From Macrostomum lignano (lineage: Eukaryota): a stretch of DNA of 64,000 nt. Shown piece after piece: positions 4,862 through 52,744 of the stretch (the stretch's first letter is position 1; every line of letters begins with the position of its first letter). The translations under genes and the position numbers were made by a program. The notes beneath the pieces were generated by a model, which saw only the letters and a list, made by a program, of their open reading frames with translations, was not told where the DNA came from and did not search any database. The DNA lies in assembly GCA_002269645.1 (NCBI GenBank), contig NIVC01003778.1, forward strand, positions 1-64,000, given 5' to 3'.

Positions 4862-22197
<17,336 letters not shown>

Positions 22198-24958: not shown

Positions 24959-25794
24959 CGTCCGACAGGATCATCATTGAGACTGCATAATGTCCCATAC
25001 AGAGCCTGTCCAATTCAATTGGAAATCGCGACTGGAGCCTCACAATGCCCTCGAGGGGAAGTGGGTACCCATCAGAGTTCTCGATGTCAAACCTCGAATG
25101 TAAACCTGTCAGTTGTTTTGTCATACGTAGTAAGGCCGAGGGGCTCATTTGCATATTTCAGCAGGCTCATTAGCAGTTGACTTCTACATGTGCATGTGTA
25201 TACACGAACTCTGTAACGCACCAATGATTTTTGTTTTAATTAGCGTCAGAAAAGCATGTGACTATTCATTGTGGTAAATATAGTATAGCTATGCGGCAGT
25301 ACTGAGCAAGGCCAAAATATTAATACATTAGTAGTTTTGAATTCCAACATGTAATAAATTGGTACACATTTCTATAGAAATATTCGTAACATGCTTCTTT
25401 CTCTATTTACACATTTTAGTCATACTCTTTTTACTTCGCATTCTATTTTCCCTACTGCTTCTACCTATTGATACTATTTCTCTACTCCTCACCCTACTAC
25501 CCCTCGACCACACTATTTAGTGTCTCCCGGCCATCCCATAGAATCGTTGCGTTCGAACAATGCGCTGTTAAAAAAATTTTAAAGCTTAAAAAAGTTTTTT
25601 AGACAAAAAGCTTTTCTTTAAAACAATGCAGATTTGTAAAAGCGTATCTAGCTTTTTGTAAATATCTGCTTTCTGCATTGTCACTGATTCAAAAGTACAT
25701 GGCCAGGTAGAACATCACCTGCTTCTGCTACTCTAAGGGTATAAGGCGCTATAAAAACGACTTTGTTACTTTGTACTTTTAGATATTGTTATCA

Positions 25795-28700
25795 CAGGGG
25801 CGCCCACCAAGAGGCAGGGGCGCCCACCAAGAGACAGGAGCGCACACCAAGAGACAGGGGCGCCCAACAAGAGACAGCAGCGCACACCAAGAGACAGGGG
25901 CGCCCACCGAGAGACAGGAGCGCACACCAAGAGGCAGGGGCTCCCAACAAGAGACAGGAGCGCCCAACAAGAGACAGGAGCGCCCAACAAGAGACAGGAG
26001 CGCCCAACAAGAGACAGGAGCGCCCAGCAAGAGACAGGAGCGCCCACCAAGAGACAGGGGCGCCCAACAAGAGACAGGAGCGCCCAGCAAGAGACAGGAG
26101 CGCCCACCAAGAGACAGGGGCGCCCACCAAGAGACAGGGGCGCACACAAAGAGACAGGGGCGCCCAACAAGAGACAGGAGCGCACATCAAGAGACAGGAG
26201 CGCCCACCAAGAGACAGGGGCGCCCACCAAGAGACAGGGGCGCCCAACAAGAGACAGGGGCGCCCAACAAGAGACAGGAGCGCACACCAAGAGACAGGAG
26301 CGCACACCAAGAGGCAGGGGCTCCCAACAAGAGACAGGAGTGCACAACAAGAGACAGGAGCGCACACCAAGAGACAGGGGCGCCCACCAAGAGACAGGGG
26401 CGCACACCAAGAGACAGGGGCGCCCACCAAGAGACAGGGGCGCCCAACAAGAGACAGGGGCGCCCAACAAGAGACAGGAGCGCACAACAAGAGACAGGGG
26501 CGCCCACCAAGAGACAGGGGCGCCCAACAAGAGACAGGAGCGCACACCAAGAGACAGGAGCGCACACCAAGAGGCAGGGGCTCCCAACAAGAGACAGGAG
26601 TGCACAACAAGAGACAGGAGCGCACACCAAGAGACAGGAGCGCACACCAAGAGACAGGAGCGCACAACAAGAGACAGGAGCGCACACCAAGAGACAGGAG
26701 CGCACACCAAGAGACAGGGGCGCCCAACAAGAGACAGCAGCGCACACCAAGAGACAGGAGCGCACACCAAGAGGCAGGGGCTCCCAACAAGAGACAGGAG
26801 CGCACAACAAGAGACAGGAGCGCACACCAAGAGACAGGAGCGCACAACAAGAGACAGGAGCGCACAACAAGAGACAGGAGCGCACACCAAGAGACAGGAG
26901 CGCCCAACAAGAGACAGGAGCGCCCAACAAGAGACAGGAGCGCCCAGCAAGAGACAGGAGCGCCCACCAAGAGACAGGGGCGCCCAACAAGAGACAGGAG
27001 CGCCCAGCAAGAGACAGGAGCGCCCAACAAGAGACAGGAGCGCCCAGCAAGAGACAGGAGCGCCCACCAAGAGACAGGGGCGCCCAACAAGAGACAGGAG
27101 CGCACACAAAGAGACAGGGGCGCCCAACAAGAGACAGGAGCGCACATCAAGAGACAGGAGCGCCCACCAAGAGACAGGGGCGCCCACCAAGAGACAGGGG
27201 CGCCCAACAAGAGACAGGGGCGCCCAACAAGAGACAGGAGCGCACAACAAGAGACAGGAGCGCACACCAAGAGACAGGAGCGCACAACAAGAGACAGGAG
27301 CGCACACCAAGAGACAGGAGCGCACACCAAGAGACAGGGGCGCCCAACAAGAGACAGCAGCGCACACCAAGAGACAGGGGCGCACACCAAGAGGCAGGGG
27401 CTCCCAACAAGAGACAGGAGCGCACAACAAGAGACAGGAGCGCACAACAAGAGACAGGAGCGCACAACAAGAGACAGGAGCGCACACCAAGAGACAGGAG
27501 CGCCCAACAAGAGACAGGAGCGCCCAACAAGAGACAGGAGCGCCCAGCAAGAGACAGGAGCGCCCACCAAGAGACAGGGGCGCCCAGCAAGAGACAGGAG
27601 CGCCCAACAAGAGACAGGAGCATCCAGCAAGAGACAGGAGCGCCCACCAAGAGACAGGGGCGCCCAACAAGAGACAGGAGCGCCCAGCAAGAGACAGGAG
27701 CGCCCACCAAGAGACAGGGGCGCCCAACAAGAGACAGGAGCGCCCACCAAGAGACAGGGGCGCCCAACAAGAGACAGGAGCGCCCAGCAAGAGACAGGAG
27801 CGCCCACCAAGAGACAGGAGCGCACACCAAGAGACAGGGGCGCCCAACAAGAGACAGCAGCGCACACCAAGAGACAGGAGCGCCCACCAAGAGACAGGAG
27901 CGCGCACCAAGAGGCAGGGGCTCCCAACAAGAGACAGGAGCGCACAACAAGAGACAGGAGCGCACACCAAGAGACAGGAGCGCACACCAAGAGACAGGGG
28001 CGCCCAACAAGAGACAGCAGCGCACACCAAGAGACAGGGGCGCACACCAAGAGGCAGGGGCTCCCAACAAGAGACAGGAGCGCACAACAAGAGACAGGAG
28101 CGCACAACAAGAGACAGGAGCGCACAACAAGAGACAGGAGCGCACACCAAGAGACAGGAGCGCCCAACAAGAGACAGGAGCGCCCAACAAGAGACAGGAG
28201 CGCCCAGCAAGAGACAGGAGCGCCCACCAAGAGACAGGGGCGCCCAGCAAGAGACAGGAGCGCCCAACAAGAGACAGGAGCATCCAGCAAGAGACAGGAG
28301 CGCCCACCAAGAGACAGGGGCGCCCAACAAGAGACAGGAGCGCCCAGCAAGAGACAGGAGCGCCCACCAAGAGACAGGGGCGCCCAACAAGAGACAGGAG
28401 CGCCCACCAAGAGACAGGGGCGCCCAACAAGAGACAGGAGCGCCCAGCAAGAGACAGGAGCGCCCACCAAGAGACAGGAGCGCACACCAAGAGACAGGGG
28501 CGCCCAACAAGAGACAGCAGCGCACACCAAGAGACAGGAGCGCCCACCAAGAGACAGGAGCGCACACCAAGAGGCAGGGGCTCCCAACAAGAGACAGGAG
28601 CGCACAACAAGAGACAGGAGCGCACACCAAGAGACAGGAGCGCACAACAAGAGACAGGAGCGCACACCAAGAGACAGGAGCGCACACCAAGAGACAGGAG

Positions 28701-28882
28701 CGCACAACAAGAGACAGGAGCGCACACCAAGAGACAGGAGCGCACACCAAGAGACAGGAGCGCACACCAAGAGACAGGAGCGCACAACAAGAGACAGGAG
28801 CGCACAACAAGAGACAGGAGCGCACACCAAGAGACAGGAGCGCACACCAAGAGACAGGAGCGCACAACAAGAGACAGGAGCG
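25795..28882. repeat. 20-bp satellite (CGCMCAMCAAGAGACAGGRG), ~154 copies, no indels
   Basis: The 20-bp register is kept across 3.1 kb. It is the source of the >1000-aa pseudo-ORFs. Confidence 0.98.
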
Positions 28883-29034
28883 CTCTCTAGAACACCAAAT
28901 AATTGGCGCTCCTTAGGGTGCGGTTTTAACTATTTACCCTTTACCCCTCTAATTTCAATTCCCTAGATAGATACGCTCGTAAAAAGACGCTGAAGAGTCA
29001 GAGACTCTTAGCGCTCACACGCCCGCAAAAAAGT

Positions 29035-33974: not shown

Positions 33975-35582
33975 ATGACTGAAGCACATTCTCTGCTAGA
34001 GATACAGCGCACAGCTGCCGCTGAAGCTGAAGCTAAATTAGTAGAAATAGATAGTCAACTGGAGAAATATTCTGCACTGGAGAAGCGCCTTGCTGAAGTT
34101 TCAAGCAGATTTCGCTCTGAACAATTATTAACATTGTCGCCTGGTTGCTTAGCTAAAGGCACAGTGCTGCACTGTTGCGAAGTTACTATTCGACTTGGCT
34201 GTGACTATTATGCTGAGACTTCTGCAGTGAATGCATTGAAAATTGTTCAACTAAGATGCGATCGATTGAGAGCTAGCAGGAATTTGTTTCTGGTGCGTTC
34301 ATCTCTTTGTTTCTTTTGTAATTTAGGGTTTAAAATAGCAAGCACTAGTTACTGCTAATATTAAATTCTTGGTCATCAGATCTGACTGAGTCATTCCTCT
34401 TGAAAATGGTAGATTTGGGCTGATATTGGGCAATGATGGCACCTCATTTGCACCTGACTTGTCCCGATGGGCTGAGTCCTAGCTCCTAACTCTCACTTCA
34501 CCTTAAATTACATGTGTGCCATTTAAAAGTGGCCGGGTGATTCTGAAAACTGATCATGCCGCACAGGGAGCCCGAGAATTTCCAGAAGACAGATGTAGCT
34601 CATAGATAAACCCATGTATGTAAATATAAATAAATAACATACAAGTATTTAATATGCAGTTACCATCGAAACGTTTTGATCGGGTAAATCTTTTATTAAG
34701 ACACTAAGCGTTGGGGGGGGGGGCAATGCAGAAAAAATCTGCCTCATAGCAAAATGACAAATCTTGGCGGGCAATTCTCATGGACCCCGCCATACATGCA
34801 TACTATTCTGACCCTTAACTAGAATGCAGTGAAAACTCAGACATGTTAACTCAAGCGTAAACAATTAACAACACAAAACGCAGGCTCGCCAATCTAGCGC
34901 GATGGAGAACTGTCGCCTACTAGAAGATCTAGGCGCCACAGAAGCTGGCGGCGATATTCGAGAACAGTGGACAAATGAATCTGAAGCCGATTGGGCTATC
35001 AAGCATCGTCAGGCAGTTCGACAACAGAAAATTGAAGAGCGAGAACAGCGAGTGAAAGATTGCGAAGCAACCGGTGCAGTTGATGATGCTAAAATTTGGG
35101 CCCGTCTCGACGAACTTGAGCTTCAAGAAGCGCTCGAAGAACAAGGATTAACAGACACGCCGATTAGTAAGTTGAAGTCAAGCAAGTCGGTTAGTTTCGC
35201 CCAGCCAGACGAGAATGATAGTCGGACTTACCGGCCTAGCGAGCCGCCTAATGCTGAAGCTATGCGTCAGAGGACAATCAATTTTAGACACAGTAGAGCA
35301 AGACTTGGTCAGACTAAAGCTGCCGACTGTGATGATGTTGACTCCACTGGCGATTGCAGCGAAGCGTCAGTCGCGCCGCTGTACACTAGTCCAGCCGATA
35401 TTGGTGCTCCTGAGCGGCTGAAACGACAAGCCTTAAGTCAGAGTCAAGCGCCGGCAGTTAAAGATCGAGTTGTTGAAGCCAATATTGCCACTGCTGCTAA
35501 TGCTCATCAATCAATTTCCGAATCCAATAGCCAACGCCCAATGTCGAAATTTCGACAGCAACGTTTGTTAGGGAAACGTTGA
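33975..35582 (+). CDS. URI1: Unconventional prefoldin RPB5 interactor (URI1/RMP/Bud27-like), 2 exons, ~338 aa
   Basis: Exon 33975-34292 has a prefoldin-alpha-like GCLAKGTVLHCCEVTIRLGCDYYAETS and a GTGCGT donor. Exon 34884-35582 has DIRE..KHRQA, WARLDELELQE and a C-terminal MSKFRQQR motif. AATAAA at 35705. Confidence 0.82.
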
Positions 35583-36151
35583 ACTGAGTGTAATTGACTG
35601 AATTGATTTATTTTTGTCTGTTAGCTACTGAATCCGTTGTATTTATGTAATTATTGGAGCGCATTTTAAGACGATTGAAACAATTTCTTCCTTGTTTGTT
35701 ATTAAATAAATGTTAAGGTGATTGTGTTTACTTTTTGAAAGATTTTCTTAGTTACTCTTTGTATCAATATTTTCCGCGATATAGCGTAAAAAAGATAATA
35801 GTGCAACTTGTAATGACTCATGAGTCAGGCAGTGTTTGTGGCGTTCAAGAAATAAGGTGTTCATCCTCCAAGTAGGGTGAGACAATATTTGTATGTTTGG
35901 AAGCGATCTGATTGCAACGTGCACAAGAGCTGCGTGCCTTACGTACATAAGTTGAGTAGCTACATGTACTTACTAATACAATGTACAAGCTTGCACTGGC
36001 CAGAGTGGCATTACACAACTTTACTAATAGCTCGTTTTAGTTGTAGCACACTGCATTTTTTAGTTTATTGAAGTTTGTCCTGTATTATTAAATAGTTTTG
36101 TAACTAACTGTACGAATTTATCAAATCGATTCTTTCTGACGATGCATTCAA

Positions 36152-38218
36152 ATGGAGCTTAATGTGCCCTATCAAAAGTTACAGGAGAGATTTGGAGACA
36201 ACGACTTTGTTAAAGCTTTAAACGAAGGCTACTGCACTCTGTCGGATGGCTTCCTTACTAGAGAAGTTCGTTTTGTGCTTCAGAAATGCTTGACTGCGGA
36301 ATTTCTCAACAGCCTCAATGAGCTAGACTTTAGCGATAGTTTCACTGCCGCCTTCATCTTTCAGCAGGACTGGCGTATAGGCGATTTTTTTGACAAGTTT
36401 AATTCCGAATTGAAAGCGTACTTCGACAAAGAAAGTACCATACTGTCCGGTATTAATCAAGACGGTGCCGAGAGCGAGGTGAGACTCTACGAAGTTGAAG
36501 ATCGGTATCATCGGTTGTCGAAGGAGTTTTCTAAGTACTATAGTCAAGAATTGGATGGAAGATGGAATTTTTTAAAACTAATTAACAATGTTTTCAAGTT
36601 CGAATCTCAGCTGTTAAATTCAAGTCGCGACGAATTGCAAAGTCGATCAGCCAAGAAGAGGCATGTCTCATCCGCTCTGTCCAGCGATTCGAAAAGTCTT
36701 GTAGCTAGCAAGGTTGCTCGGCTGTGCGAGCCTTGTATGGTTGGCAGAGGCCCACAGCTAGAAAAAACGTTGGGTTACTTGAAAACTGTTTGCCTCACGC
36801 CAGACCGAGCTCAAAAGCAGATTGATGGAGTGTCAACTCTTGTAAATGAATTTCTTGCTTTGTCTCATCGCGTTTCTGCTATCAACAATTGCTTGGATTA
36901 TCAGAATCTGTTAGAACTGGAGAAGAAAGCTCCATTAGAGCTTGTTTATCGGACCTGCTCACAGTTTGAGCAAAGTGGTATGCTTAAAAAGCTTGCAGAC
37001 CCGATGAAGAAATTGCTACACAACTCCTTAGTGATTGAGGAACATGCTCGAGTCGTCCGAGTCGGGTCTAGCACTGCTGGTAAATACTTAAAGCTCCGCG
37101 TGCGACCACTCTTTGCCAAGTTCTTCCAAGTCGTACTAGGCGTTGAACGCGACGGTGATTTGCGCATCGCTGTATTGTCTGCTAAGACTGCGCATAACTT
37201 TGAAGACTTGTCGATGGAGGCCTTGTGCAATGCGGAGCAGTTAACTAAAAATCTACTGGGTTCCAGCTCAATTGACTGGGATGGAAATACTGCCAAACTG
37301 TCGCTTCGCTTCGAAAATCGGCCGCAGTCATCTAGCAGCGAATCAAAGCCTACTCAGGCCTTTGTACTTTGCGTATTTTTCTTGACGCAACCAAACCCAG
37401 GTGGACTGTTGCCGGAGCAAACAGTCGTCTCGTGCTTGTCCAAGCCAATCGTTTTCATTACGAACGACATCCAGCGCTCGGAGGCTACGGCCGCTATTGA
37501 ATGGTACGCTTCGGATCGTCCAGTCTACCCAATAGTTGCCGGAGCTCCCAAGCCGCTGACGCTTGATGAAGTAGTTTATCTAATCCAAAATTACATCCTT
37601 CGAAAAACTAAGCATCAAATCAATGCTGATAGTATTGCGTACTTCCGTGAAAAATGCCGTCTATTGTTATCAGCCGGCGATAGAGTAGTATTTAAAGATT
37701 TTATTAAAAAACCTATCATTGGAAGTGTGAGCAGTGGTGAGATCAAGCCTCGGTCACTGTGGGAATTCGCATTCTGTTGCGTGAATTTTGTCTTAAATAG
37801 CAAATATCTGTGCAAGGCGATGTTCTCTAACGGACTCGTGTATGGATTTGTAACGCGAGACAAAGCCGATGAACTCCTGAGATCGAATCCGCACCACCCG
37901 AACTCGCTTGCTCTGTTACGGTTCTCAGAGACCATGGCAACCGTTACCGTGGCGATATGGCGTAACGGTGAAACAATGCACGAAGTGCCAAAGCCGAAGA
38001 AGCATTTTGACAATACTTCGGTGCCTGAGTTTTGTTACACTCCGATTCAACAAGAAAGCGTGCTCAAATATGACGGCACGTTCGCTACCCCGCATGAGCT
38101 GAGCTCGTACTTTCCAAAGGATAGCTATATACCTGGCTACGTTGCGATCAGCAGAGACATGGACTTATTAAGCCTTTGCAGCGGTGAAATACCTGACGAT
38201 TATATTTTTAGTACTTGA
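36152..38218 (+). CDS. STAT: Divergent STAT-family transcription factor, single exon, 688 aa
   Basis: DNA-binding-domain motifs LVIEEHARVV..LRVRPL and SKPIVFITNDIQ..AAIEWY (compare STAT SLPVVVISNVSQ..SILWY), linker LWEF, SH2 GLVYGFVTRDKADELL..ALLRFSE (Arg590), and tail PGYV (Tyr663). Confidence 0.85.
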   Translation: MELNVPYQKLQERFGDNDFVKALNEGYCTLSDGFLTREVRFVLQKCLTAEFLNSLNELDFSDSFTAAFIFQQDWRIGDFFDKFNSELKAYFDKESTILSGINQDGAESEVRLYEVEDRYHRLSKEFSKYYSQELDGRWNFLKLINNVFKFESQLLNSSRDELQSRSAKKRHVSSALSSDSKSLVASKVARLCEPCMVGRGPQLEKTLGYLKTVCLTPDRAQKQIDGVSTLVNEFLALSHRVSAINNCLDYQNLLELEKKAPLELVYRTCSQFEQSGMLKKLADPMKKLLHNSLVIEEHARVVRVGSSTAGKYLKLRVRPLFAKFFQVVLGVERDGDLRIAVLSAKTAHNFEDLSMEALCNAEQLTKNLLGSSSIDWDGNTAKLSLRFENRPQSSSSESKPTQAFVLCVFFLTQPNPGGLLPEQTVVSCLSKPIVFITNDIQRSEATAAIEWYASDRPVYPIVAGAPKPLTLDEVVYLIQNYILRKTKHQINADSIAYFREKCRLLLSAGDRVVFKDFIKKPIIGSVSSGEIKPRSLWEFAFCCVNFVLNSKYLCKAMFSNGLVYGFVTRDKADELLRSNPHHPNSLALLRFSETMATVTVAIWRNGETMHEVPKPKKHFDNTSVPEFCYTPIQQESVLKYDGTFATPHELSSYFPKDSYIPGYVAISRDMDLLSLCSGEIPDDYIFST

Positions 38219-39519: not shown

Positions 39520-41300
39520 CACAGTTCCCCCTTCTCCAGTGCCCCCCCCCCCAGTCTCCATAGTTCCCCCTTCTTCAGTGCCCCCCAGTCTCCACAGTTC
39601 CCCCTTCTCCAGTACCCCCCCCCCCAGTCTCCACAGTTCCCCCTTCTCCGGTGCCCCCCCCCCCAGTCTCCACAGTTCCCCCTTCTTCAGTGCCCCCCAG
39701 TCTCCACAGTTCCCCCTTCTCCAGTACCCCCCCCCAGTCTCCACAGTTCCCCCTTCTCCGGTGCCCCCCCAGTCTCCACAGTTCCCCTTCTTCAGTGCCC
39801 CCCAGTCTCCACAGTTCCCCCTTCTCCAGTACCCCCCCCAGTCTCCACAGTTCCCCCTTCTCCGGTGCCCCCCCCAGTCTCCACAGTTCCCCCTTCTCCG
39901 GTGCCCCCCAGTCTCCACAGTTCCCCCTTCTCCGGTGCCCCCCCCCCCAGTCTCCACAGTTCCCCCTTCTCCGGTGCCCCCCCCAGTCTCCACAGTTCCC
40001 CCTTCTCCGGTGCCCCCCAGTCTCCACAGTTCCCCTTCTCCAGTGCCCCCCTCCAGTCTCCACAGTTCCCCCTTCTCCAGTACCCCCCCCCAGTCTCCAC
40101 AGTTCCCCCTTCTCCGGTGCCCCCCCCCCAGTCTCCACAGTTCCCCCTTCTCCGGTGCCCCCCCCAGTCTCCACAGTTCCCCTTCTCCGGTGCCCCCCTC
40201 CAGTCTCCACAGTTCCCCCTTCTCCAGTGCCCCCCTCCAGTCTCCACAGTTCCCCCTTCTCCAGTGCCCCCCCCAGTCTCCACAGTTCCCCCTTCTCCGG
40301 TGCCCCCCAGTCTCCACAGTTCCCCCTTCTCCGGTGCCCCCCAGTCTCCACCCCCCCCCCCAGTCTCCACAGTTCCCCCTTCTCCGGTGCCCCCTCCAGT
40401 CTCCACAGTTCCCCTTCTCCAGTGCCCCCTCCAGTCTCCACAGTTCCCCCTTCTCCAGTACCCCCCCCCAGTCTCCACAGTTCCCCTTCTCCGGTGCCCC
40501 CCCCAGTCTCCACAGTTCCCCCTTCTCCGGTGCCCCCCCCCCCAGTCTCCACAGTTCCCCCTTCTCCGGTGCCCCCTCCAGTCTCCACAGTTCCCCCTTC
40601 TCCAGTGCCCCCCTCCAGTCTCCACAGTTCCCCCTTCTCCAGTGCCCCCCCCCCCCAGTCTCCACAGTTCCCCCTTCTCCGGTGCCCCCCAGTCTCCACA
40701 GTTCCCCCTTCTCCGGTGCCCCCCAGTCTCCACCCCCCCCCCCAGTCTCCACAGTTCCCCCTTCTCCGGTGCCCCTCCAGTCTCCACAGTTCCCCTTCTC
40801 CAGTGCCCCCCCCAGTCTCCACAGTTCCCCCTTCTCCAGTGCCCCCCTCCAGTCTCCACAGTTCCCCTTCTCCAGTGCCCCCAGTCTCCACAGTTCCCCC
40901 TTCTCCGGTGCCCCCCCAGTCTCCACCCCCCAGTCTCCACAGTTCCCCCTTCTCCAGTGCCCCCCCCCCAGTCTCCACAGTTCCCCCTTCTCCGGTGCCC
41001 CCCCAGTCTCCACAGTTCCCCCTTCTCCGGTGCCCCCCCCAGTCTCCACCCCCCCCCCTAGTCTCCACAGTTCCCCCTTCTCCAGGGCTCTTCTCTTCAC
41101 AGTGCCCCCGTCTCCCCAATGCTCTTCTCTTCGCAGTGCCCCCTTCTCTAGTGCTCTTCTCTTCACAGTGCCCCTTTCGTCACAGTGCCCCTTTCTTCAC
41201 AGTGCCCCCTTCTCTAGAGCCGCCTTCTCCACAGTTCCCCTTTTTTACAGTGCCCCGTCTCCTAAATGCCCCCTTCTCCTCATGGCCCCCTTAGACACAG
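39520..41300. repeat. C-rich ~33-37-bp minisatellite (CnAGTCTCCACAGTTCCCCCTTCTCCRGTGC) with variable C-runs, decaying at its 3' end
   Basis: Direct inspection. It gives the Pro-rich and Gly-rich pseudo-ORFs. Confidence 0.95.
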
Positions 41301-41398: not shown

Positions 41399-41851
41399 AT
41401 GGAGCGAGTTGCCTACATGCCGTTTCAAGTGACCTCGGATCACGGCGACACGCGTCGCGAAGAGTATCTAATGTCAACACTGCGCATCAGCGATCAAGAT
41501 CCTGCACTGTTTAATTGTTCCTTTAGAGGTCGGCCGATCAGCGGTAAGACTATTCGAGAATTACCCCACGGATGCGTGGGTCATCTAGTCACCCTGCTGC
41601 CCAGACCCAGCGATGCCGAGGTCGTTATTGACGACAACAAAAGCGACGGTCGACAAGTTCGCGTTGAAGAGACCTTTTCTAGCATGTCTGTGTGCAGTCT
41701 GGGCAGCAGGCACCATCACACGGACAAATTGTCCCAGGCTATTACCAGCTGGATGAAGCTTAGCCGCCTGATTCACGATCCCATTGATAAAGACAGTGTG
41801 AATGCTACCACTGCTAATGATGATACTACTGAGAATGACAATGCTAAGTAG
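41399..41851 (+). CDS. RNASEH2C: Ribonuclease H2 subunit C-like, single exon, ~150 aa
   Basis: VAYMPFQV..G..EY; CSFRGRPISG..LPHGCVG; F..D....AI..W..L...IHDP follow the RNase H2C pattern. The ORF track fuses it to the upstream repeat, so the start codon is uncertain (41363, 41399 or later). Confidence 0.72.
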   Translation: MERVAYMPFQVTSDHGDTRREEYLMSTLRISDQDPALFNCSFRGRPISGKTIRELPHGCVGHLVTLLPRPSDAEVVIDDNKSDGRQVRVEETFSSMSVCSLGSRHHHTDKLSQAITSWMKLSRLIHDPIDKDSVNATTANDDTTENDNAK

Positions 41852-42442
41852 TTCAATTAATAAGAACTCTTACCTAAACTAATGCATGATGATAAATGAC
41901 TTTAACTTCAGCGTTACCGTTGCAATCTCTGTAAATTTGTTTCTCCATTGCTGTACTTTAAAAAGTCAATTATGTTCTATATAAATCGTTAAAAAATCAA
42001 ATCATCTCATAACGGTTTTGTTTTAACTTTCCCATTATAATATTTTACACGGGCATAGTTGCATTTGAAAATTGATAACTAATCCATCAGTACATTGTGA
42101 AACTTGCATTTTTCTATAATGTTGCTTTTTATCGAATGATCTGTTGGTCAGTTAAACGTATTCTGTTTAGCTTTTTTTTTCGTTTGCCACATGTTAGGTT
42201 AAGCTATAGGATTAACCATTTAGTTTAGGATAGGCATTAATAATGTGTGAGTCTGACCCTTAGGGCACAAAGAGTGTCCATCCCTGACAATTAGAAAGTC
42301 AGGGTCGTTGCACACACTGTGTGAGCGTGTGTATGCCAGCGCTGGTTGTTGTTGGACGCAACAGTCTTGTAAATGTTTAGATATTTATTATCTTATTTAT
42401 ACTGCTTTGCAAACACATTCATGCCATTGTTCCAGCCTAATA

Positions 42443-43949
42443 ATGTATCAGCGTCTCTATCGATCCGTCCGATTTCTCTCTGGACTCGCCGTTCAACGGC
42501 AGCAGCAGTTGTCTGCTATCAGCAATTTGAGTGGCATTTCTAGAAGCTCTCAACTTTGTAGTCATCGATTGATGTCGTCTACTTCTTCGGAGGCCGACGC
42601 TGGCGCTCCTGGAGTCGGTGGCGAGGCTGATGACGCCCAGAAGCTGGAGCAGCAGCAGCAGGAGGTTGCGGCTCTGGCTAAACGTTGCTCGGAATTACAA
42701 ACGGCTATGGATCAGCTGCAGGTGAAGCTTATTTAATTGTTTTTATTGAATTGAATTAAAATTCATGAGAGTCAGGGCCGCCGTGCGAGTGTGCGTCCCT
42801 GTGCGGGCGTGTGTCTGTGTAAATATTCTTGCTTCAATACGTTTCAGGGCCATATTAAACACTGTTGCAGTGTATTCTACTTCTGCAGAGTAGTAGTATT
42901 AGAACATTTTTAAAAATAGTTTGTTTCGTAATCGTATCTAACTTTGAACAGGACAAGTACGTTCGCGCTCTAGCCGAAAGTGAGAACACCAGGCGTCGAT
43001 TGACTAGACAAGCCGAAGAGGCTCGGATATTTGGTATCTCCGCATTCTGCAAGGATCTCCTCGACGTTGCCGACGTTCTGGCTAAGGCGAACGAGACCGC
43101 GCCACCTGAGGCAGATCCCACTCTGGTGGAGGGTCTGCGCATGACTGAGGCCCAGCTCAAACAGGTGAGTACCTGGCTGACTTTGTGGAGTACCTTTGTT
43201 CTTGTGTCCTTAATCGGTTATGATCGTGTCCTTGGTTGGTTGTGAGATTGTGTCCTTGGTTGGTTGTGAGATTGTGTCCTTGGTTAGCTGTGAGATTGTG
43301 TCCTTGGTTGGTTGTGAGATTGTGTCCTTGGTTAGCTGTGAGATTGTGTCCTTAGTTGGTTGTGAGATTGTGTCCTTATAGTTGGTTTTGAGATCGTGTC
43401 CTTAGTTGATTGCGAGATCGTGCCCTTAGTTGGTTTTGAGATCGTGTCCTTGGTTAGTTGTGAGATTGTGTCCTTGGTTGGTTGTGAGATTGTGTCCTTG
43501 GTTGGTTGTGAGATTGTGTCCTTGGTTAGCTGTGAGATTGTGTCCTTAGTTGGTTGTGAGATTGTGTCCTTAGTTGATTGCGAGATCGTGCCCTTAGTTG
43601 GTTTTGAGATCGTGTCCTTAGTTGGTTATGAGATCGTGTCCTTGATTGGTTATGAGATCGTATCCTTAGTTTGAGATCGTGCCCTTAGTTTGTTATGAGA
43701 TCGTGTCCTTGATTAGTTATAAGATCGTGTCATTCCTGGCCACTTCAGGTGTTCCGACGTCACAAGCTTGAGCCAATAAAACCCGACGTTGGCGAGAAGT
43801 TCGACCCGAATCAGCACGAGGCCCTATTCGAAGTGCCCGTTGCCGAGAATTGCCAACCAGGCACTGTTGCCGTAGTTACAAAGGTTGGCTACCGTCTGCA
43901 CGAGAGAACCCTTCGTCCAGCTCTTGTTGGCGTGGTCAAATACACCTGA
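42443..43949 (+). CDS. GRPEL1: Mitochondrial GrpE nucleotide-exchange factor, 3 exons, 230 aa
   Basis: Exons 42443-42721 (Arg/Ser-rich presequence), 42952-43164 (DKYVRALAESENTRRR..FCKDLLDVAD..EGLRMTE) and 43749-43949 (FDPNQHEAL..PGTV..GYRLHERTLRPALVGV). All are phase 0 GT-AG. AATAAA at 44041. Confidence 0.95.
43215..43732. repeat. 24-bp minisatellite (GAGATTGTGTCCTTGGTTGGTTGT) filling GrpE intron 2
   Basis: About 21 copies. Confidence 0.93.
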
Positions 43950-45150
43950 ACATTTTAGTTACACCAATAGTTCTAACGGGGTGTTTTGATCGTATATATT
44001 ATATAGTGTTTGCAATTAATCTGTGCTGGGCTATTTGTTAAATAAATGAGCTTTTATAAAAACCGTGTGGGAGGAGTATTGATCAAGCACCCTGTCTATT
44101 TAGCTTTTCTTTAGGTAAGAACTTAAGTCTAAAGAGTAACTTTTGTCTTTGCATTACTACTAGGTACTGACTATGCACCCCTCTGATTCAGTAGTATCGT
44201 TCGAATGACGGAAGATAAGAAAGTTGCGCTTCTTTGCCATCTCATTGTACGATCCACTTGCAACTTATACGCCTTTCGTTGTGTACTGATCGATATATTC
44301 AGTCTGTTCTGCATACGATTGTCAAGGTCGTTTTGCCGGTTATCCTTTATTTTTAATAGCTAATAATAGGATTTGCATTTGCTCTTGTATGGAACATAAA
44401 TGTTACTTTGAGCAAATAAACTGAAGCAGCAACGTACGTAAGAAAAAGACTTACTTAAGTTGCTTCTCGTGAAGTTATTTGATTGTAACTGCAACGAATC
44501 AGTTTTGGTTGTTTAACATTTTTCTTCATTTTAATTGAATAAATAAACTACTTGACGGCTTGACAGGCACAATATGATTTAAATGTACTGCAACAAATAC
44601 AAATAACCTGAAAATGAAGGAATGATTGCTCAGAATCTCATGTAAGCTCTTTCATGTACAATGTTCAATGCATGTTAGAGTACATACATCGTGCATCTCG
44701 TCTCTTGGTACATCTTTGACTTTTTCTGAGCTTTCACAATTTTTATTCCCTTAATGGTTTAATTGACGTTTTGATACTACAAAAGTATACAGGCTTTTTC
44801 ATTAAAACCCGAAATACCCCAAGTTGGCAATGATTAAGATTTGTTAACGGAGAGTTACATATTCAGCTGAAAATAGCATTAAATACCCATGTAAACAGAA
44901 AATTAAGACTGCAGACAGTTGTTTCGTCAATAATTATAATATGCCAGTACGAGCTACTATATAATTAAGGTATTTATGAAGGACAATTTACGTACAAGAG
45001 CAACAAGCTTTTTGCTGTTGAAAGCTAGCTATTCCCTAAAACTGGGGTTGTTGCTTCGCCGTTTGAATTGAACGTGCGTGGGCATGCAGACCCAAATCTA
45101 AAAATAACATTTTTACACGCCTCAAGTAGGCGTGTTGCTTTCGCATAAGA

Positions 45151-45383: not shown

Positions 45384-48300
45384 ATGCAGAGAGGATACTT
45401 CTACTTTGCATTTACCTTGCTGCTTGTCTTTGGTAAGTGAACCGCTGCTCATTTAATTAGAAATATATCAATTGTAAATTGTATTGACATTGCAAAAATG
45501 GTTTCCTGTTGCCTGTTGGTTGGGTCGGGTTTCTTCATTGCTAAAAATTTCTGTGATGTGCTCTGCAGCTGTTTTTTGTCAAATAGGCCTAGCTATTTTC
45601 ATAAAACATAATGTTTGCATTAATTAGTTAGCTTAGTAGCTCTTTAAGAATCAGATTTTTTATTTTAATTTCTAATACTGTCTTTGACTCTTAAATTCTC
45701 ATAATTGCCTTCTATTGTCAGACATTGACAACAAAAGCCAGTGACAATTTTAGGAAACAGGAGGCCAAAGGGCATGCTATTATAAGATGTGGCCAAAAAT
45801 TCTATATCTTTGATGGCATGCCTCTTTTGATTATCTAGTTATAGGTTGCTGCTTTCATTTTTATTCATACCTTGTCTTAAGCAAAGCTATTATACTAGCT
45901 AATCTAAACTAATTGATTTTGAAAGTGTTTAGTTTAAAAATGATTTAAAAAATAGTTTAAAAAATCTTTTTTGGCTTGGCTAGACAAATAAAAGTCTAAA
46001 AATATGGCTTTCTTTTAAAACTATCAGTATAAAAGTTATCAATTTTTATAACTTATCCTTGGCCTGCCACATTTTATATTGGCTAGATTAAGCAAGTTGC
46101 CTAGTAGTTGCACATATATACTAATACATATGATTTATATAAATGGTTTATATACTCAGCAATATTGAAAAGTCACTATTCTATATGCCAATAAGCAATT
46201 TGTCTTGGACTAGTCTGTAATAAAAGATGCAAAAAAAACTCAAGGGTAGCTTTAATCTAATCAACCCTTTTGCATACTTATCTCCCATTCCTATTTCATT
46301 TCTTTATCCAAGTCTATTGCAACATAGCTAAGTTGTGTCACTTGCAAATATTGGAAGACTTGACCTGCATTCTCAAAACAACAAAAGTGGCAACTATAAA
46401 TATAATCTTCCATGATAGCAACTTTTTAATAATGTTGCTAAGTATATAATAACAAAGTAATGTTTGTTTTCCATTTTCAATATATATGAAGCCAAGCAAT
46501 AATACAATTCTGTCCTAATCTGCTTTCTTACCTTGGATTTCACCTGCAGGCATCCTGTCCTCGCTGGTGCCCCCGGCCCAGTCGTCGCAGCAATCTGACG
46601 ATGCCAGCAAAGTGACGGAGCCAACTGGTAGCGACAAAGTTGGCTCCAAAACTGACGACCGCGTGGTCGAACGCGAGGAGCAGGCCATCAAGCTCGATGG
46701 TCTCAACGCTGCTCAAGTTAAAGAGCTTCGCGAAAAGGCCGAGAAGTTCACCTTCCAGGCTGAGGTTGATCGAATGATGAAGCTAATTATCAATTCGCTC
46801 TACAAGAACAAGGAGATCTTCCTTCGCGAGCTCATCTCCAATGCTAGCGATGCCCTGGATAAGATCCGCTTCCTGTCTCTCACTAACAAGGAGGTCCTGT
46901 CTGCTACCGACGACCTCAGCATCCGCATCAAGGCCGATAAGGACGCGAAGACTTTGCACGTGATTGACACCGGCATCGGCATGACCAAGGAGGATTTAGT
47001 GAAGAATCTGGGCACAATTGCCAAGTCGGGCACATCGGAATTCTTTAATAAATTCAACGAGGCCAAGTCTCAGACTGAGATGACGGATTTGATTGGCCAG
47101 TTTGGTGTTGGATTTTACAGCGCCTTCCTTGTCGCAGATCGGGTCACCGTCATTACTAAGAATAACGACGACAAGCAGTACATCTGGGAGTCCGATGCCA
47201 GCAGCTTCTCTATTAATGAGGATCCTAGGTGAGAAAATGACTTTAGAGTTATCTTTCAAAGAATTTAAAGGATTTCTAGGCCAATTTAAATGTTTAATAG
47301 TCAATTAGACTAGGTAGTAGAGATTTGTAACAGCCCACTCAGATAAGTAAGAAAGCGGTAAACTTCAAAGGGCCAGATTGAGAACCTAACATATAATTGC
47401 GGGCCAGAGGAGGGGAGAGAGGTAATAGAGAAGATAGATGGGAGGAGAGCTGAGGGAGAGGAAAGGAGTGAGAATAGAAGAGAAGGAGAGGAGAGAAGAA
47501 GAGAAGAGAGAAAAAAGAAGGGGAGGAGAGAGAAGAGAGAAGACTGGAGAGGAGAGGAAAAAAAAAGAGGATATTAGAGAGAAGGGAGCTGAGAAGAGAC
47601 AAACCTTGAGCAGGCCGGATTGCTATTGTGAAGTTTCAATGGACCCGAAGACCGGATAGAGAGGCTTTGCGGGGGGGGAGTTTTCCGACCCCCTGCTCTA
47701 AATCCTACAACTGCAGGCAAATCACCCGCTTTGCAGAGGCAACACGCTGAAGCGGGGCACCGAGATCATTCTGCACATGAAAGATGAGGGCCTGGACTGG
47801 CTGGAGCCCAGCAGCCTGCGCGATCTCATTGTGAAGTACTCGCAGTTCATCAACTTCCCAATCTACGTGTGGGAGAGTCGCACCGAGACAGTTGAAGAGG
47901 CGGCCGAGAAGTCCGAGGAGAAGAAGGAGAAGAAAGACGAGGACGCCACAGTAGAGGAGGAGAAAGAGAAAGCCGAGCCGAAGAAGGTTGAGAAGACTGT
48001 GTGGGACTGGCGCCTGGTGAACGAGAACAAGCCCATCTGGACCAGGAAGCCTGCCGAGATCACTGACAGCGAGTACAACCAGTTCTTCAAGTCCTTCACC
48101 AAGGCTAGCGAGGATCCTCTGGCCAAGACTCACTTTGTTGCCGAAGGCGAGGTCACATTCAAGAGCATCTTATTCGTCCCTAAGACTGCCGACTTTGACG
48201 CCTGGTCGAACTTTGGCAAGAAAACTGACAACATCAAGATGTACGTTCGACGAGTGTTTATCACCGACAACTTCGAAGAGATGATGCCAAAGTATCTCAG

Positions 48301-50665
48301 CTTCATCAAGGGCATTGTTGATTCGGACGATTTGCCATTGAACGTCAGCCGAGAGACTCTGCAGCAGCACAAGCTACTTAAAGTAATCAAGAAGAAACTG
48401 GTTCGCAAAGCTCTCGACATGATTAAGAAAATCGAGCCGGAAAAGTACAAGGAGTTCTGGAAGGAGTACTCTACTAACATCAAGGTTGGCATCACGGATG
48501 ACGCCGCTAACAGGACTCGGCTGTCTAAGCTGCTGATGTTCTGGTCCTCGAACAATGACAAAGAGCAGGTGTCTCTGGCCGACTACGTGAGCAGGATGAA
48601 GGAGAAGCAGGAGAACATCTACTTCATCTCTGGACAGTCTCGCAAAGAAGTTGAAACTTCGCCGTTTGTTGAGAAGCTACTGAAACGCGGCTACGAAGTC
48701 CTGTACCTGCTGGAGCCGATCGACCAGTACGCCATCCAGTCCCTGCCCGAGTTCGAGGGCAAGAAGTTCCAGAATGCCGCCAAGGACGGCTTGAAGATTG
48801 GCGAAGAGACCGCCGAGGTCAAGGAGCGACGCGAGGCCATGGTGAAGGACTTTGAGCCGTTGACCAAATGGCTGCAGGAGACCGCTTTGAAGGACAAGAT
48901 TGAGAAGGCTCAGATCTCCGACAGATTGGCTTCCTCCCCGTGCGCTCTGGTGGCCTCCCAGTACGGCTGGGACGCCGCTATGGATCGGGTGATGCGAGCT
49001 CAAGCCTACCAGAAGGCTGGCGATCCGTCTCAGGTATAAGTTCAGATTGGGATTAGCGGTTTGCTCGTATGTTATGGGCCATTGAATTTCAAAAAACCTT
49101 TCTTGATGCTCAAAATATCAAAATGCTCAAATGTCCGATTGACACACAGGGCTCAAAAATCCCATTGACTCAGTGCTCAAATATCCCATTGACTCAGTGC
49201 TCAAATATCCCATTGACTCAGTGCTCAACTATCCCATTGACTCAGTGCTCAAATATTCCATTGACACACAGGGCTCAAATATCCCCATTGACACAGTGCT
49301 CAATATCTCATTGACACAGTGCTTAAATATCCCCATTGACACAGTGCTCAAATATCCCCATTGACACAATGCTCAAATATCCCATTGACACACAGGGCTC
49401 AAATATCCCCATTGACACAGTGCTCAAATATCCGATTGACACACAGGGCTCAAATATCCCATTGACTCAGTGCTGATATGACTCAGTGCTCAAATATCCC
49501 ATTGACTCAGTGCTCAATATCTCATTGACACAGTGCTTAAATATCCCCATTGACTCAGTGCTCAATATCTCATTGACACAGTGCTCAAATATCCCCATTG
49601 ACACAATGCTCAAATATCCCATTGACACACAGTGTTCAAATATCCCCATTGACACAGTGCTCAAATATCCGATTGACACACAGGGCTCAAATATCCCATT
49701 GACTCAGTGCTCAAATATCCCATTGATTCAGTGCTCAAATATCCCATTGACACACAGGGCTCAAATATCCCCATTGACACAGTGCTCAAATATTCCATTG
49801 ACTCAGTGCTCAAATATCCCATTGACTCAGTGCTCAAATATCCCATTGATTCAGTGCTCAAATATCCCATTGACACACAGGGCTCAAATATCCCCATTGA
49901 CACAGTGCTCAAATATTCCATTGACTCAGTGCTCAAATATCCCATTGACTCAGTGCTCAAATATCCCATTGACTCAGTGCTCAAATATCCCATTGACTCA
50001 GTGCTCAAATATCCCTTTGACACAGTGCTCAAATATCCCATTGACTCAGTGCTCAAATATCCCATTGACTCAGTGCTCAAATATCCCATTGACACAGTGT
50101 TAAAACATTCGATTTAGTTCCTAAAAAGTAAAGGCATTGGGATAGTACTGTATAAGGTACTCAATTAGTCCCTGCCACCACTCATCAACTCTACATCACA
50201 CCCTCAAACAGGTGCACTTCGCCTCCCAGAAGAAGATTCTGGAGATCAACCCGCGCCATCCGCTCATCAAAGAGCTCAAACGTCGCAGCGCCGATTCCCC
50301 AGACGACAAAACCGCCAACCAGCTGGCCACCATCCTGTACGAGGCCGCCACCCTGCGCAGCGGCTACGCCCTGGAGGACTCGTCAGGCTTCGCTGAACGT
50401 CTCGAAGCCATGCTGCGTCGTTCGGTGAACATTCCCGAGTCGGAGACAGTCGAAGAGGACGACCTGGACGGCGCTGCCGCTTCCGCACCGTCGACAGACG
50501 AGACGGCGAAAAAGACGGACGAATCTGCGGCGGTGAGTGTTTGAAATTTCTTCTATATGACGAAAGATATTTTAGTCTTGTGAATTTGGATCATATTTTA
50601 ATTCATTGCCACACACTTATTTTTCTCCTACATACATTTTTATATTTCAGAAAACTGAGTTGTAA
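45384..50665 (+). CDS. HSP90B1: Endoplasmin / GRP94 (ER Hsp90), 5 exons, C-terminal KTEL
   Basis: Exons 45384-45432 (signal peptide), 46550-47228 ([51 protein letters not shown]), 47737-49033, 50212-50532 ([10 protein letters not shown]) and 50651-50665 (KTEL-stop). Phases 1, 2, 0, 0 are consistent. Confidence 0.97.
47355..47695. mobile_element. hAT/Charlie-type MITE copy 2 with GA-rich core, in HSP90B1 intron 2
   Basis: Shares AAGGGCCAGA, GCGGGCCAGAGG, AGAGAGAAG.GAGCTGAGAAGAGACA, CCGGATAGAGAGGCTT and AGTTT.CCGACCCCCTG with 14838-15144. The 5' TIR is not evident. Confidence 0.6.
49128..50098. repeat. ~24-bp minisatellite (CAGTGCTCAAATATCCCATTGACT) filling HSP90B1 intron 3
   Basis: About 40 copies with interspersed variants. 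Confidence 0.95.
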
Positions 50666-52744
50666 AATGAATGAAACAAAGAACTGAAAACATTTATTAG
50701 TAAATCAAAATCTTTATAATATTAAAGTTCTATATTTGAGTTGCTCCGGTAATGTTAGACTAAAAACATACAGTAATTTTATTTATTAATAATCAGTTGC
50801 AATATGCCCGCACCCTGTGTAACTGAACACTTCACCAAAATCGTTTCATGGTTCACTTATTTTCCTAGCTATACTTTGTAGTTTGAATTTGTTCAAATTT
50901 TCTCTCTTTTATGTTGTTTTACTGTTGCCACGTTTTCTTCTGCTGTGTGTTTGCGTGTGTGTGCGTTTTTTGTGTTTCCTTTCTAGCGTCAGTGTTTTCC
51001 CTCACCTTTGTTCGATTGAAAGCCCGATTTTTTGTCCTGGTGCATTTTGCCGCGCTGTCTTACATAATAATATATACTTAAGTCTATTCAATATGTCCTT
51101 AAATTGTTTGCCAATTGATGGATTTTATTTGAAAAATAAAACACAAGCTAACTACTGAGGCGGGTACTGTCGCCTGAACATTAAACCATTGTTCAGAGAG
51201 AGAACTGCTGGGAAATTTCTTGCCTCCTTCATCGAATAAGGAAAACTTGAGAATTATTTGATTTGATTTGAAGACGCACGAATGAGATTCCACGTTTGCC
51301 AATTTTAGTAAATAGCGCGTTCCTATACTAACCTCTGCCGCCTCCTCCCTTCATTTATATTCGTAGAGACTTATGACTAACATACCGATAATTAATCACC
51401 TTTGAGCAGCCAGCGTCTTTATTTCAGTTATTTTTATTTTTGTTTTTTTGCTTGCGTTTTTCCTCTAACCTCTACCTAACTCTTCACGACACCCCCTAAT
51501 GGATGCTTTAAAAGCCGTGTCGTTTAGTTATAAATTTCGCTCATCTATTTAATGTGTCGTTTTTGCATTCGTTGGAATTCGAATCGAAAAGAAAATTATA
51601 TACGTGCCCTGAATAGGTATGCTACTAGCAGATGTCCAAATTTAATCAGTTAATTATATTAAAATATTGCATGATTGACTTTATTTGTTGTCTTTCTTAA
51701 TTTTTATCTTTTTAGTCTTCTCTTATTTATTGAACGTTGTCAACCCATATTAACCCTTATCCTGCTAGTTCCTTGTTTAACAATTTGGCTCCAAAAATTA
51801 AGCAGACTAATACCGATAACCTTAAATTTGAATTACCTACCTCACCTATGCTCTGTATATCACTCAGTCCTCAGAAACCTTTCAAAAGAATTTATTAAAC
51901 TGCATGCTTGGCAAGGTTCCCTATAATGCATGATATCGATTGCTTTTCAGCAATGCAGCAAAAAAACCTTGCCAACATCTGGTAAGCGAGAAGTTCCCTA
52001 ACTGACCAGTGAATAATACTGTGTATTTAATGTCTGAGCAAATTGCAGCGCTGGCATGACATGAGAATTCACCGCGTGTTTGCAAATACTAATCGGGTTT
52101 TAATTCCTCTCTGTGTAGATAAGGATTGGACTTATTGATTTCCCATGGCTTTGGCTTGGTTGTCGCATGCATGCAAGCACGAGATTTTTCCTGCACCCTG
52201 AGTGAGCAACTTAAGAACAAAAATTCTCGTTTTAATTGTCCATCTACTACATGTAAGCGCTACTATTAGTAATACATTGCAGATGCTAATGCAGAAACAA
52301 ACTTTTGTTGCATTTGTAAACAAGACCGTCTCCTGAAATGACCCCGTTAAGTTTCCCAGAATGTATGCTAGGAATTGTACTCTAGGAAAGTTACACTACA
52401 TGCAATTCTTTATGACGAAATGTAGCGATTGCAAGGAAGTTGTTCGATGAAGCTTTCATTTGTTGCGCTAATTGAACAGCCTTGAAAGCTGTGTGTGTTT
52501 TGTGTTTGTGTACACATCCATTGAAAGACATAGCGACTGCTGGAATACGGTAGTCACCCATGTAGTGCAATTTCCAAGTAATCTTGGCCTTACATCAAAG
52601 TAGTGCGTTATCTTCTACCAGAGCTACATGTAGGGGCGTCGCCACCGGAGGAACATGGGCCTAGGGGGGGGGGGACATCCCCCCAGTTAAAGCTATATGG
52701 GAGTGACATGCAAACGCTTTATCCCCCCTCACGAGTGTCTTCGG

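What the first reader, a model, noticed from the sequence alone, without database searches (positions are those of the whole stretch)
36152..38218. Intronless, highly divergent STAT with intact SH2 arginine and tail tyrosine but almost no transactivation tail
It keeps the DNA-contacting N..Q motif (ITNDIQ), the SH2 LLRFSE and GY663V. Yet it is only loosely alignable elsewhere, ends 25 aa after the tyrosine, and has no introns in 2067 nt, whereas animal STAT genes are normally many-exon. It may be a retroposed or lineage-specific STAT acting as a dominant-negative, repressive or JAK-independent factor. Embedded among housekeeping genes, it is the most unusual protein in the window.
Basis: partly seen in the sequence, partly recalled or inferred. 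Interest (0 to 1): 0.7.

Follow-up and report, generated by a model that had tools for sequence, protein, structure and literature searches.

The report
Cryptic single-exon STAT gene in a flatworm
This is a real, expressed and selectively maintained STAT-type transcription factor gene of the flatworm Macrostomum lignano, so divergent that standard domain searches miss it, and it is one of at least three such paralogues in that genome.

Summary
The 688-aa ORF at 36152-38218 (+) and all three motifs are exactly as described. That result is a sensitivity failure. An exhaustive phmmer scan retrieves two Pfam-validated STATs (E 2e-5, 2e-4). A profile built only from this protein and two M. lignano paralogues hits STAT5B at 8e-22, STAT3/6 at 1e-13 and STAT1 at 8e-11, collinear through the DNA-binding, linker and SH2 domains. 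The STAT N-domain is not detectable. The window is M. lignano DNA, syntenic with NIVC01000027.1. The CDS has one exon, and so does the CDS of paralogue Mlig018849, in a genome averaging 4.9 introns per gene. dN/dS against the assembly copies is 0.09 (P about 1e-5). All three paralogues keep the SH2 arginine, a GYV tyrosine and an acidic tail. The best reading is a tyrosine-phosphorylation-activated, probably JAK-independent STAT. Retroposition is possible but unproven, and nothing supports a dominant-negative role. It is a new member of a known kind and of moderate interest.

The parts
36152..38218 (+). Single-exon CDS of a divergent STAT-family protein (688 aa plus stop). It is 99% identical to M. 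lignano BOX15_Mlig027911g1.
36152..36940 (+). Residues 1 to about 263: predicted all-helical N-terminal region in the position of the STAT N-domain plus coiled coil. Homology to either is not demonstrated.
   Evidence: Secondary structure of low-confidence models. hhalign probability 1% and no STAT N-domain hit in PDB. PDB alignments begin only at profile position about 270-280.
36941..37516 (+). Residues about 264-455 (boundaries approximate): last coiled-coil helix and the STAT DNA-binding domain, including KLRVRPL (314-320), which aligns with STAT5 TVRLLV and STAT3 KVRLLV.
   Evidence: Profile-to-PDB alignments
37457..37474 (+). ITNDIQ (residues 436-441), aligned with STAT3 ISNICQ. By my own knowledge of the STAT3-DNA structure these are the DNA-contacting Asn and Gln. 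P432, I436 and Q441 are invariant in the 7-sequence alignment.
37517..37816 (+). Residues about 456-555: STAT linker domain.
   Evidence: Collinear alignment to STAT3 and STAT5 linker. pLDDT is 60-77 in the alignment-based model.
37817..38071 (+). Residues about 556-640: SH2 domain (GLVYGFVTRDKADELL ... LLRFSE ... VTVAIW).
   Evidence: Pfam SH2 at 15.8 bits, E 0.015, below the gathering score. STAT3 and STAT5 alignments.
37913..37930 (+). LLRFSE (588-593). R590 is the phosphotyrosine-binding arginine position. L589, R590, F591 and S592 are invariant across the three paralogues and two conventional STATs.
38138..38140 (+). Codon of Y663 in PGYVAISRD, the candidate activating phosphorylation site, 73 residues after R590. 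GYV is conserved in all three paralogues.
38141..38215 (+). 25-aa C-terminal tail VAISRDMDLLSLCSGEIPDDYIFST (5 acidic, 1 basic), a candidate minimal activation or docking motif.
   Evidence: The function is inferred.
36136..36139 (+). CTGA: T36137 is A in both assembly copies. That single difference removes an acceptor-like TTTCAG ending 13 nt before the ATG and creates the in-frame TGA.

Best explanation
The ORF encodes a functional but extremely diverged STAT-family transcription factor of Macrostomum lignano. It is one of at least three old paralogues (about 25-29% identical to each other), and for two of them the coding sequence was checked and is a single exon. Shown: homology to the STAT core (end of coiled coil, DNA-binding domain, linker, SH2), conservation of the SH2 arginine and of a GYV tyrosine 73-85 residues after it in all three paralogues, purifying selection, and synteny with an annotated transcript-derived gene. 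Inferred: it works as STATs do. A tyrosine kinase phosphorylates Y663. Two molecules, or two different paralogues, pair through reciprocal SH2-phosphotyrosine contacts. The dimer binds palindromic GAS-like DNA through the Ig-like domain that carries N438 and Q441, and the short acidic tail recruits co-activators. Because surveys report no JAK in flatworms, the kinase is probably a receptor or Src-type tyrosine kinase, as is assumed for the JAK-less nematode STATs.
For: The window protein alone retrieves P0004 and P0005 at E 1.8e-5 and 2.2e-4 from 1.84e9 proteins. Both pass Pfam cut-offs for STAT_int, STAT_linker or STAT_bind. The C-terminal 259 aa hit only STAT3 and STAT5B in PDB, and the STAT3 match (E 0.012) is collinear. 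A profile of the three M. lignano paralogues alone gives STAT5B 7.8e-22, STAT5A 2e-20, STAT3 1.3e-13, STAT6 2.9e-13, STAT1 8.4e-11, STAT2 5e-6 and Dictyostelium STATa 0.02. Foldseek on the alignment-based model puts STAT chains in the top 15, with E down to 2.8e-11. R590 and its neighbours are invariant, and GYV plus an acidic tail occur in all paralogues. Against the two assembly copies the CDS has 12 synonymous and 4 nonsynonymous differences, giving dN/dS 0.093 and binomial P 1e-5, while the flanks diverge 2-7% against 0.8% in the CDS. The public gene model comes from a transcriptome-based annotation. JAK is reported absent or not detected in flatworms.
Against: Pfam gives no hit on the whole protein, and SH2 is below threshold on a fragment. 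No similarity to the STAT N-domain or to most of the coiled coil was found. Both AF2 models are of low confidence (pLDDT 33.5 and 46.5), Foldseek TM-scores are only about 0.2, and the alignment given to AF2 contained two conventional STATs, so that check is not independent. Phosphorylation, dimerisation, DNA binding and transcriptional activity are all untested. Absence of JAK in M. lignano was not checked here, and one of the two papers contradicts itself on this point.
Confidence: 0.72

Rival explanations
1. It is a retrogene-derived STAT that acts as a dominant-negative or repressor because it lacks a transactivation domain, like the vertebrate STAT beta isoforms.
For: The CDS is uninterrupted in a genome with 4.9 introns per gene, and the neighbours have introns. 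Its tail of 25 aa is the shortest of the three paralogues, against 77 and 46 aa.
Against: Paralogue Mlig018849 is also single-exon, so the intronless state predates an ancient duplication and says nothing specific about this copy. No intron-bearing parent gene turned up, and no poly(A) remnant follows the 3' end. The tail is acidic and hydrophobic, not absent, and may share an IP.D motif with the paralogue's C-terminus. By my own knowledge, some functional non-vertebrate STATs, such as Dictyostelium STATa, have equally short or shorter tails.
Confidence: 0.12
2. It is a STAT-derived protein that has lost canonical signalling, for example an unphosphorylated scaffold or chromatin-associated factor that uses the SH2 domain only to dock on other phosphoproteins.
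For: Divergence is extreme: Pfam fails and the N-domain is unrecognisable. Literature reports no JAK in the phylum.
Against: The exact residues needed for reciprocal SH2-phosphotyrosine dimerisation (R590, GYV at the right spacing) and the DNA-loop motif are conserved across three paralogues that are otherwise only about 25% identical. Such conservation is hard to explain without the canonical mechanism.
Confidence: 0.12
3. It is a non-functional or spurious ORF: a pseudogene, a repeat artefact or a transposon gene.
For: The window is full of minisatellites that create long artefactual ORFs, and the protein has no Pfam hit.
Against: No tandem repeat lies in 36152-38218. dN/dS is 0.09 with P 1e-5. 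The syntenic position is conserved on two further contigs. Homology to STATs is significant.
Confidence: 0.02

Closest known systems
STAT5/STAT6-type STATs (vertebrate STAT5A/B and STAT6; mollusc 'STAT5B' KAL4218751.1)
   Same: The DNA-binding, linker and SH2 domains are collinear, and these are the best profile hits (STAT5B E 7.8e-22). The GYV tyrosine motif and the Arg-to-Tyr spacing of 73 residues resemble STAT5 (DGYV) and STAT6. Those comparison values come from my own knowledge, not from a tool.
   Different: Identity is about 15-19%. There is no detectable STAT_int domain or STAT_alpha coiled coil. The tail after the tyrosine is 25 aa rather than about 100 aa. The CDS is a single exon. 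No JAK is reported in the phylum.
Nematode STATs (C. elegans STA-1 and STA-2), which work without a JAK
   Same: These are divergent STATs in a lineage where a JAK homologue is absent (stated in PMC13203501), so another kinase must act upstream.
   Different: There is no evidence of a specific relationship. No nematode protein was retrieved at E<=0.001. The comparison concerns mechanism only.
Planarian stat5 (Schmidtea mediterranea), up-regulated in the dsRNA response (PMC8797187)
   Same: It is a flatworm STAT homologue, which shows that the phylum retains STATs.
   Different: It was not retrieved by the exhaustive single-sequence search, so it is either absent from that library or no closer than mollusc STATs. 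Orthology is untested.
Vertebrate STAT beta isoforms (STAT1beta, STAT3beta)
   Same: They have a short C-terminus after the phosphotyrosine.
   Different: Those isoforms arise by alternative splicing of a long-tailed gene, whereas here the short tail is the gene's only encoded end, and it is acidic.

Membership tests
STAT transcription factors | STAT-type DNA-binding domain (Pfam STAT_bind, Ig-like barrel) | tested here: met
   Pfam itself gives no hit. The paralogue-only profile aligns through the whole DNA-binding domain of STAT5, STAT3, STAT6 and STAT1 at E 1e-11 to 1e-21. Conventional STATs P0005 (STAT_bind 2.4e-6) and P0004 are retrieved by the single sequence.
STAT transcription factors | Linker domain between the DNA-binding domain and SH2 (Pfam STAT_linker) | tested here: met
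   The window sequence itself aligns collinearly to the STAT3 linker, and the profile aligns to the STAT5 and STAT3 linkers. There is no direct Pfam hit.
STAT transcription factors | C-terminal SH2 domain with the phosphotyrosine-binding arginine | tested here: met
   LLRFSE has R590, which is invariant in 7 sequences. Pfam SH2 scores 15.8 bits (E 0.015), below the 21-bit cut-off. The region is aligned to the STAT3 and STAT5 SH2.
STAT transcription factors | Single conserved tyrosine C-terminal to SH2 that is phosphorylated on activation | tested here: inconclusive
   The residue is present: Y663 in GYV, conserved in three paralogues 73-85 residues after the Arg. Phosphorylation itself cannot be tested with these tools.
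STAT transcription factors | N-terminal interaction domain (Pfam STAT_int) | tested here: inconclusive
   There is no Pfam hit. hhalign against the P0004 N-domain gives probability 1.1%, and the N-terminal profile finds no STAT in PDB. The only hints are paralogue P0003 at STAT_int E 0.0025, below threshold, and the STAT3 N-domain 4zia at E 0.36. A helical region of the right length is present.
STAT transcription factors | Four-helix coiled-coil domain (Pfam STAT_alpha) | tested here: inconclusive
   Only the last helix is covered by the PDB alignments, which start at profile position about 270. Residues 60-290 are predicted helical in low-confidence models.
STAT transcription factors | Activation by a JAK kinase | not tested
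Literature reports JAK absent or not detected in flatworms.
Processed retrogene | Intronless copy of an intron-containing parent gene, with a poly(A) remnant or target-site duplications | tested here: inconclusive
   The CDS is single-exon. No parent gene was found among 1.84e9 representatives. The paralogue is also single-exon. No A-tract follows the 3' end. Acceptor-like sites 13 nt before the ATG in L001 and L003 suggest 5' (trans-)splicing.

The most novel reading that the evidence does not exclude
Macrostomum, and perhaps flatworms more widely, may have replaced the conventional multi-exon STAT with a fast-evolving, retrogene-derived family of three or more single-exon STATs. On this reading the family has shed the recognisable N-domain, is driven by non-JAK tyrosine kinases, and can form mixed dimers among paralogues. 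That would be a rewired STAT module, possibly tied to regeneration or to the antiviral dsRNA response seen for planarian stat5.
Probability: 0.2. Interest if true: 0.55.

Novelty: new member of a known kind. Interest (0 to 1): 0.4.

Why it matters
[quoted passage not shown] This locus shows that statement reflects search sensitivity and not true absence. An early-branching, transgenesis-capable flatworm carries at least three STAT-like genes, annotated only as 'hypothetical' or 'SH2 domain-containing'. If JAK is truly absent, M. lignano offers a tractable system (RNAi and transgenesis exist) to ask which kinases drive STATs without JAK, and whether STAT signalling contributes to regeneration or innate immunity in flatworms. 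For annotation practice, it is a clean example where Pfam thresholds fail but a profile of within-genome paralogues succeeds.

Tried and rejected
1. Pfam on the whole protein and on five pieces found only a sub-threshold SH2.
2. phmmer of the whole protein against PDB gave nothing at E<=1. Only the C-terminal half gave weak STAT3 hits.
3. Single-sequence AF2 was unusable at pLDDT 33.5. AF2 with a 7-sequence alignment was still poor at pLDDT 46.5, so no residue-level structural claims are made.
4. The word-indexed homologue search was used three times: with the protein, with alignment A1, and with the core of P0004. Each run returned only the query's own cluster. I could therefore not collect a broad STAT alignment, build a phylogeny or search for JAK.
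5. The N-domain tests were negative.
6. The third paralogue's locus (P0008) is not on record, so its exon structure is unknown.
7. Literature searches for the gene ids or for a described M. lignano STAT found nothing.
8. Considered and rejected: a repeat-derived spurious ORF (no tandem repeat there); a pseudogene (dN/dS 0.09); a missing upstream coding exon in the window copy (in-frame TGA 4 codons upstream and no upstream ATG).
9. In the assembly copies the frame is open for 16 codons across an acceptor-like site, so an upstream coding exon there cannot be formally excluded without RNA data.

Full report
OBSERVATION. The + strand ORF at 36152-38218 is real. It is 688 codons long, starts at ATG and has no internal stop. 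The protein ends 25 residues after Y663. In the window an in-frame TGA lies four codons upstream of the ATG, and there is no upstream in-frame ATG.

SOURCE AND CONTEXT. [quoted passage not shown] That gene sits on two contigs of assembly GCA_002269645.1. The window is collinear with contig NIVC01000027.1 over about 20 kb. The gene order is a prefoldin-domain gene, this gene, RNase H2 subunit C, GrpE and an HSP90-family gene. Much of the rest of the window is minisatellite DNA, which produces long spurious ORFs. No tandem repeat touches the gene.

IS IT A STAT? Pfam returns no family for the whole protein even at E<=1. On fragments only SH2 appears, at 15.8 bits, below the 21-bit cut-off. Whole-protein phmmer against PDB is also empty. 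Three more sensitive and mutually consistent lines show this is a sensitivity problem.

(i) The C-terminal 259 residues alone hit only STAT3 (E 0.012) and STAT5B among 177,635 PDB sequences. The STAT3 alignment is collinear. PIVFITNDIQRSEATAAIEWY pairs with [21 protein letters not shown], and GLVYGFVTRDKADELL...LLRFSE pairs with GYIMGFISKERERAIL...LLRFSE.

(ii) An exhaustive phmmer scan of 1.84 billion representatives finds five proteins. These are the gene itself, two other M. lignano proteins (E 6e-8 and 3e-6), and two long proteins at E 1.8e-5 and 2.2e-4. The last two pass Pfam's curated cut-offs for STAT_int, STAT_linker or STAT_bind. One of them is annotated as STAT5B of the bivalve Mactra antiquata.

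(iii) I built a profile from the window protein and the two M. lignano relatives only, none of which Pfam recognises. It hits STAT5B at 7.8e-22, STAT5A at 2e-20, STAT3 at 1.3e-13, STAT6 at 2.9e-13, STAT1 at 8.4e-11, STAT2 at 5e-6 and Dictyostelium STATa at 0.02. The 19 best hits are all STATs. The alignments run unbroken from the last coiled-coil helix through the DNA-binding domain and linker into the SH2 domain.

As a non-independent consistency check, Foldseek on an AF2 model puts STAT chains in the first 15 places (E down to 2.8e-11). TM-scores are only about 0.2 because the model is poor, with mean pLDDT 46.5 and 60-77 only in the linker and SH2.

WHAT IS NOT SHOWN. The first 260 or so residues have no detectable similarity to the STAT N-domain or to most of the coiled coil. 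hhalign probability is 1%, and the N-terminal profile finds no STAT N-domain in PDB. The region is predicted to be helical and is about the right length, with roughly 290 residues before the DNA-binding domain. Membership in the STAT family therefore rests on the core, and the N-terminal features remain inconclusive.

PARALOGUES. The two closest relatives are from the same genome. One is Mlig018849 (P0006, 738 aa annotated, 740 aa from its ATG). The other is UniProt A0A1I8GXG3/A0A1I8HF71 (P0008/P0003, about 625 aa, named 'SH2 domain-containing protein'). They are 23-29% identical to the window protein over their full length, and tblastn of P0006 against the window gives E 4e-40. All three keep P-[IV]-x-F-I-T-[NH]-D-x-Q, G-L-[VI]-[YF]-G-F, LLRFSET and a GYV tyrosine 73-85 residues after the SH2 arginine. 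Net-acidic tails of 25, 77 and 46 residues follow. The gene is therefore not a sole orthologue. It belongs to an old, lineage-restricted STAT-like family. No orthologue outside M. lignano was retrievable by single-sequence search.

GENE STRUCTURE. The annotated gene spans exactly 2,073 nt for 690 codons plus stop. Paralogue Mlig018849 spans 2,217 nt for 738 codons plus stop, so both have single-exon CDSs. The neighbouring prefoldin, GrpE and HSP90 genes have introns, and M. lignano genes average 4.9 introns (PMC5730564). The intronless state is therefore atypical for this genome, but it is shared by paralogues that diverged long ago. It was probably acquired once, before the duplications, by retroposition or by intron loss.

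I found no parent gene and no poly(A) remnant. Both the assembly copy and the paralogue have an acceptor-like YnCAG ending exactly 13 nt before the ATG. Given that 39% of M. lignano genes are trans-spliced, this is most simply read as a spliced-leader or 5'-UTR acceptor. In the window copy one T-for-A difference at 36137 abolishes this site and creates the upstream TGA.

IS IT FUNCTIONAL? Against the two identical assembly copies the window CDS has 16 differences in 2,067 nt, of which 12 are synonymous and 4 nonsynonymous. That gives dN/dS 0.093 and P about 1e-5 under neutrality. The flanks are 2-7% diverged against 0.8% in the CDS. The public gene model comes from a transcriptome-based annotation, which implies expression, although I did not see reads.

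MECHANISM. Steps shown: a conserved STAT core, an SH2 arginine, a tail tyrosine and purifying selection. Steps inferred: phosphorylation of Y663, reciprocal SH2-phosphotyrosine dimerisation (possibly between paralogues), binding of GAS-like palindromes through the loop carrying N438 and Q441, and co-activator recruitment by the short acidic-hydrophobic tail (5 acidic and 1 basic residue in 25). Two papers report JAK as absent or not detected in flatworms (PMC4557010; PMC13203501, which contradicts itself in one sentence). The upstream kinase is therefore probably not a JAK, as is assumed for the JAK-less nematode STATs. Nothing supports a dominant-negative or repressor role. By my own knowledge, some functional non-vertebrate STATs, such as Dictyostelium STATa, have equally short or shorter tails.

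COMPARISON AND NOVELTY. By E-value order and the GYV motif, the closest known proteins are STAT5/6-type STATs. A planarian 'stat5' has been reported as a dsRNA-response gene (PMC8797187), so a flatworm STAT is not in itself new. [quoted passage not shown] I found no paper describing M. lignano STATs or these gene ids.

VERDICT. This is a new, cryptic member of a known family, in fact a small family of them. Its unusual but not unprecedented features are a single-exon CDS, an unrecognisable N-terminus, a short tail and a probable lack of JAK. Interest is moderate at 0.4.

Noticed in passing
window 54705-64000; 25794-28883; 39520-41279; 7502-8508; 17363-18143; 49124-50099; 52733-53834: The window is packed with minisatellites, for example a 22-bp unit x434 filling the last 9.3 kb, a 20-bp unit x154, and a C-rich 34-36-bp array just downstream of the STAT-like gene. 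They account for most long ORFs in several frames and for the extreme GC and AT skews.
   Followed up: partly
window 36136-36139: A single T (window) versus A (both assembly copies) at 36137 converts an acceptor-like TTTCAG ending 13 nt before the ATG into TTTCTG, and at the same time converts AGA into an in-frame TGA. The window copy may therefore use a different 5' (trans-)splice site.
   Followed up: partly
L003 5940-5997 (paralogue Mlig018849 on NIVC01002768.1): The paralogue also has an acceptor-like CAG ending exactly 13 nt before its ATG, with a GTAAGT donor-like site 32 nt upstream. This may be a mini-intron or a trans-splice site in the leader. The annotated protein starts two codons after the real ATG, which reads MECQSG....
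   Followed up: partly
L004 202-2937 (JGI metagenome 3300036281, contig Ga0373523_00230): P0004, the conventional STAT closest to the window protein, is an uninterrupted 911-aa ORF on a 4.3-kb environmental contig of unknown organism. It retrieved only itself in the word-indexed search.
   Followed up: partly
P0008 / P0003 (UniProt A0A1I8GXG3 / A0A1I8HF71): The third M. lignano paralogue lacks about 50 residues of the linker domain that the other two have. This could be a real deletion or a gene-model artefact, and its locus was not retrievable.
   Followed up: no
window 33975-35582 (+) and 46567-49039 (+); roughly 41400-44000 by synteny with L001: The neighbours are a prefoldin-domain gene in at least two exons and an HSP90-family gene in several exons. 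By collinearity with L001, RNase H2 subunit C and GrpE lie between the STAT-like gene and HSP90. A 24-bp tandem array (43222-43731) falls within the span where GrpE maps by collinearity with L001.
   Followed up: partly
PMC13203501, sections 3.4 and 4: The paper says in one sentence that JAK 'was detected in ... Platyhelminthes' and in another that it 'was not detected in ... Platyhelminthes'. Its statement that STAT is not detected in Platyhelminthes conflicts with this locus and with planarian stat5 in PMC8797187.
   Followed up: no
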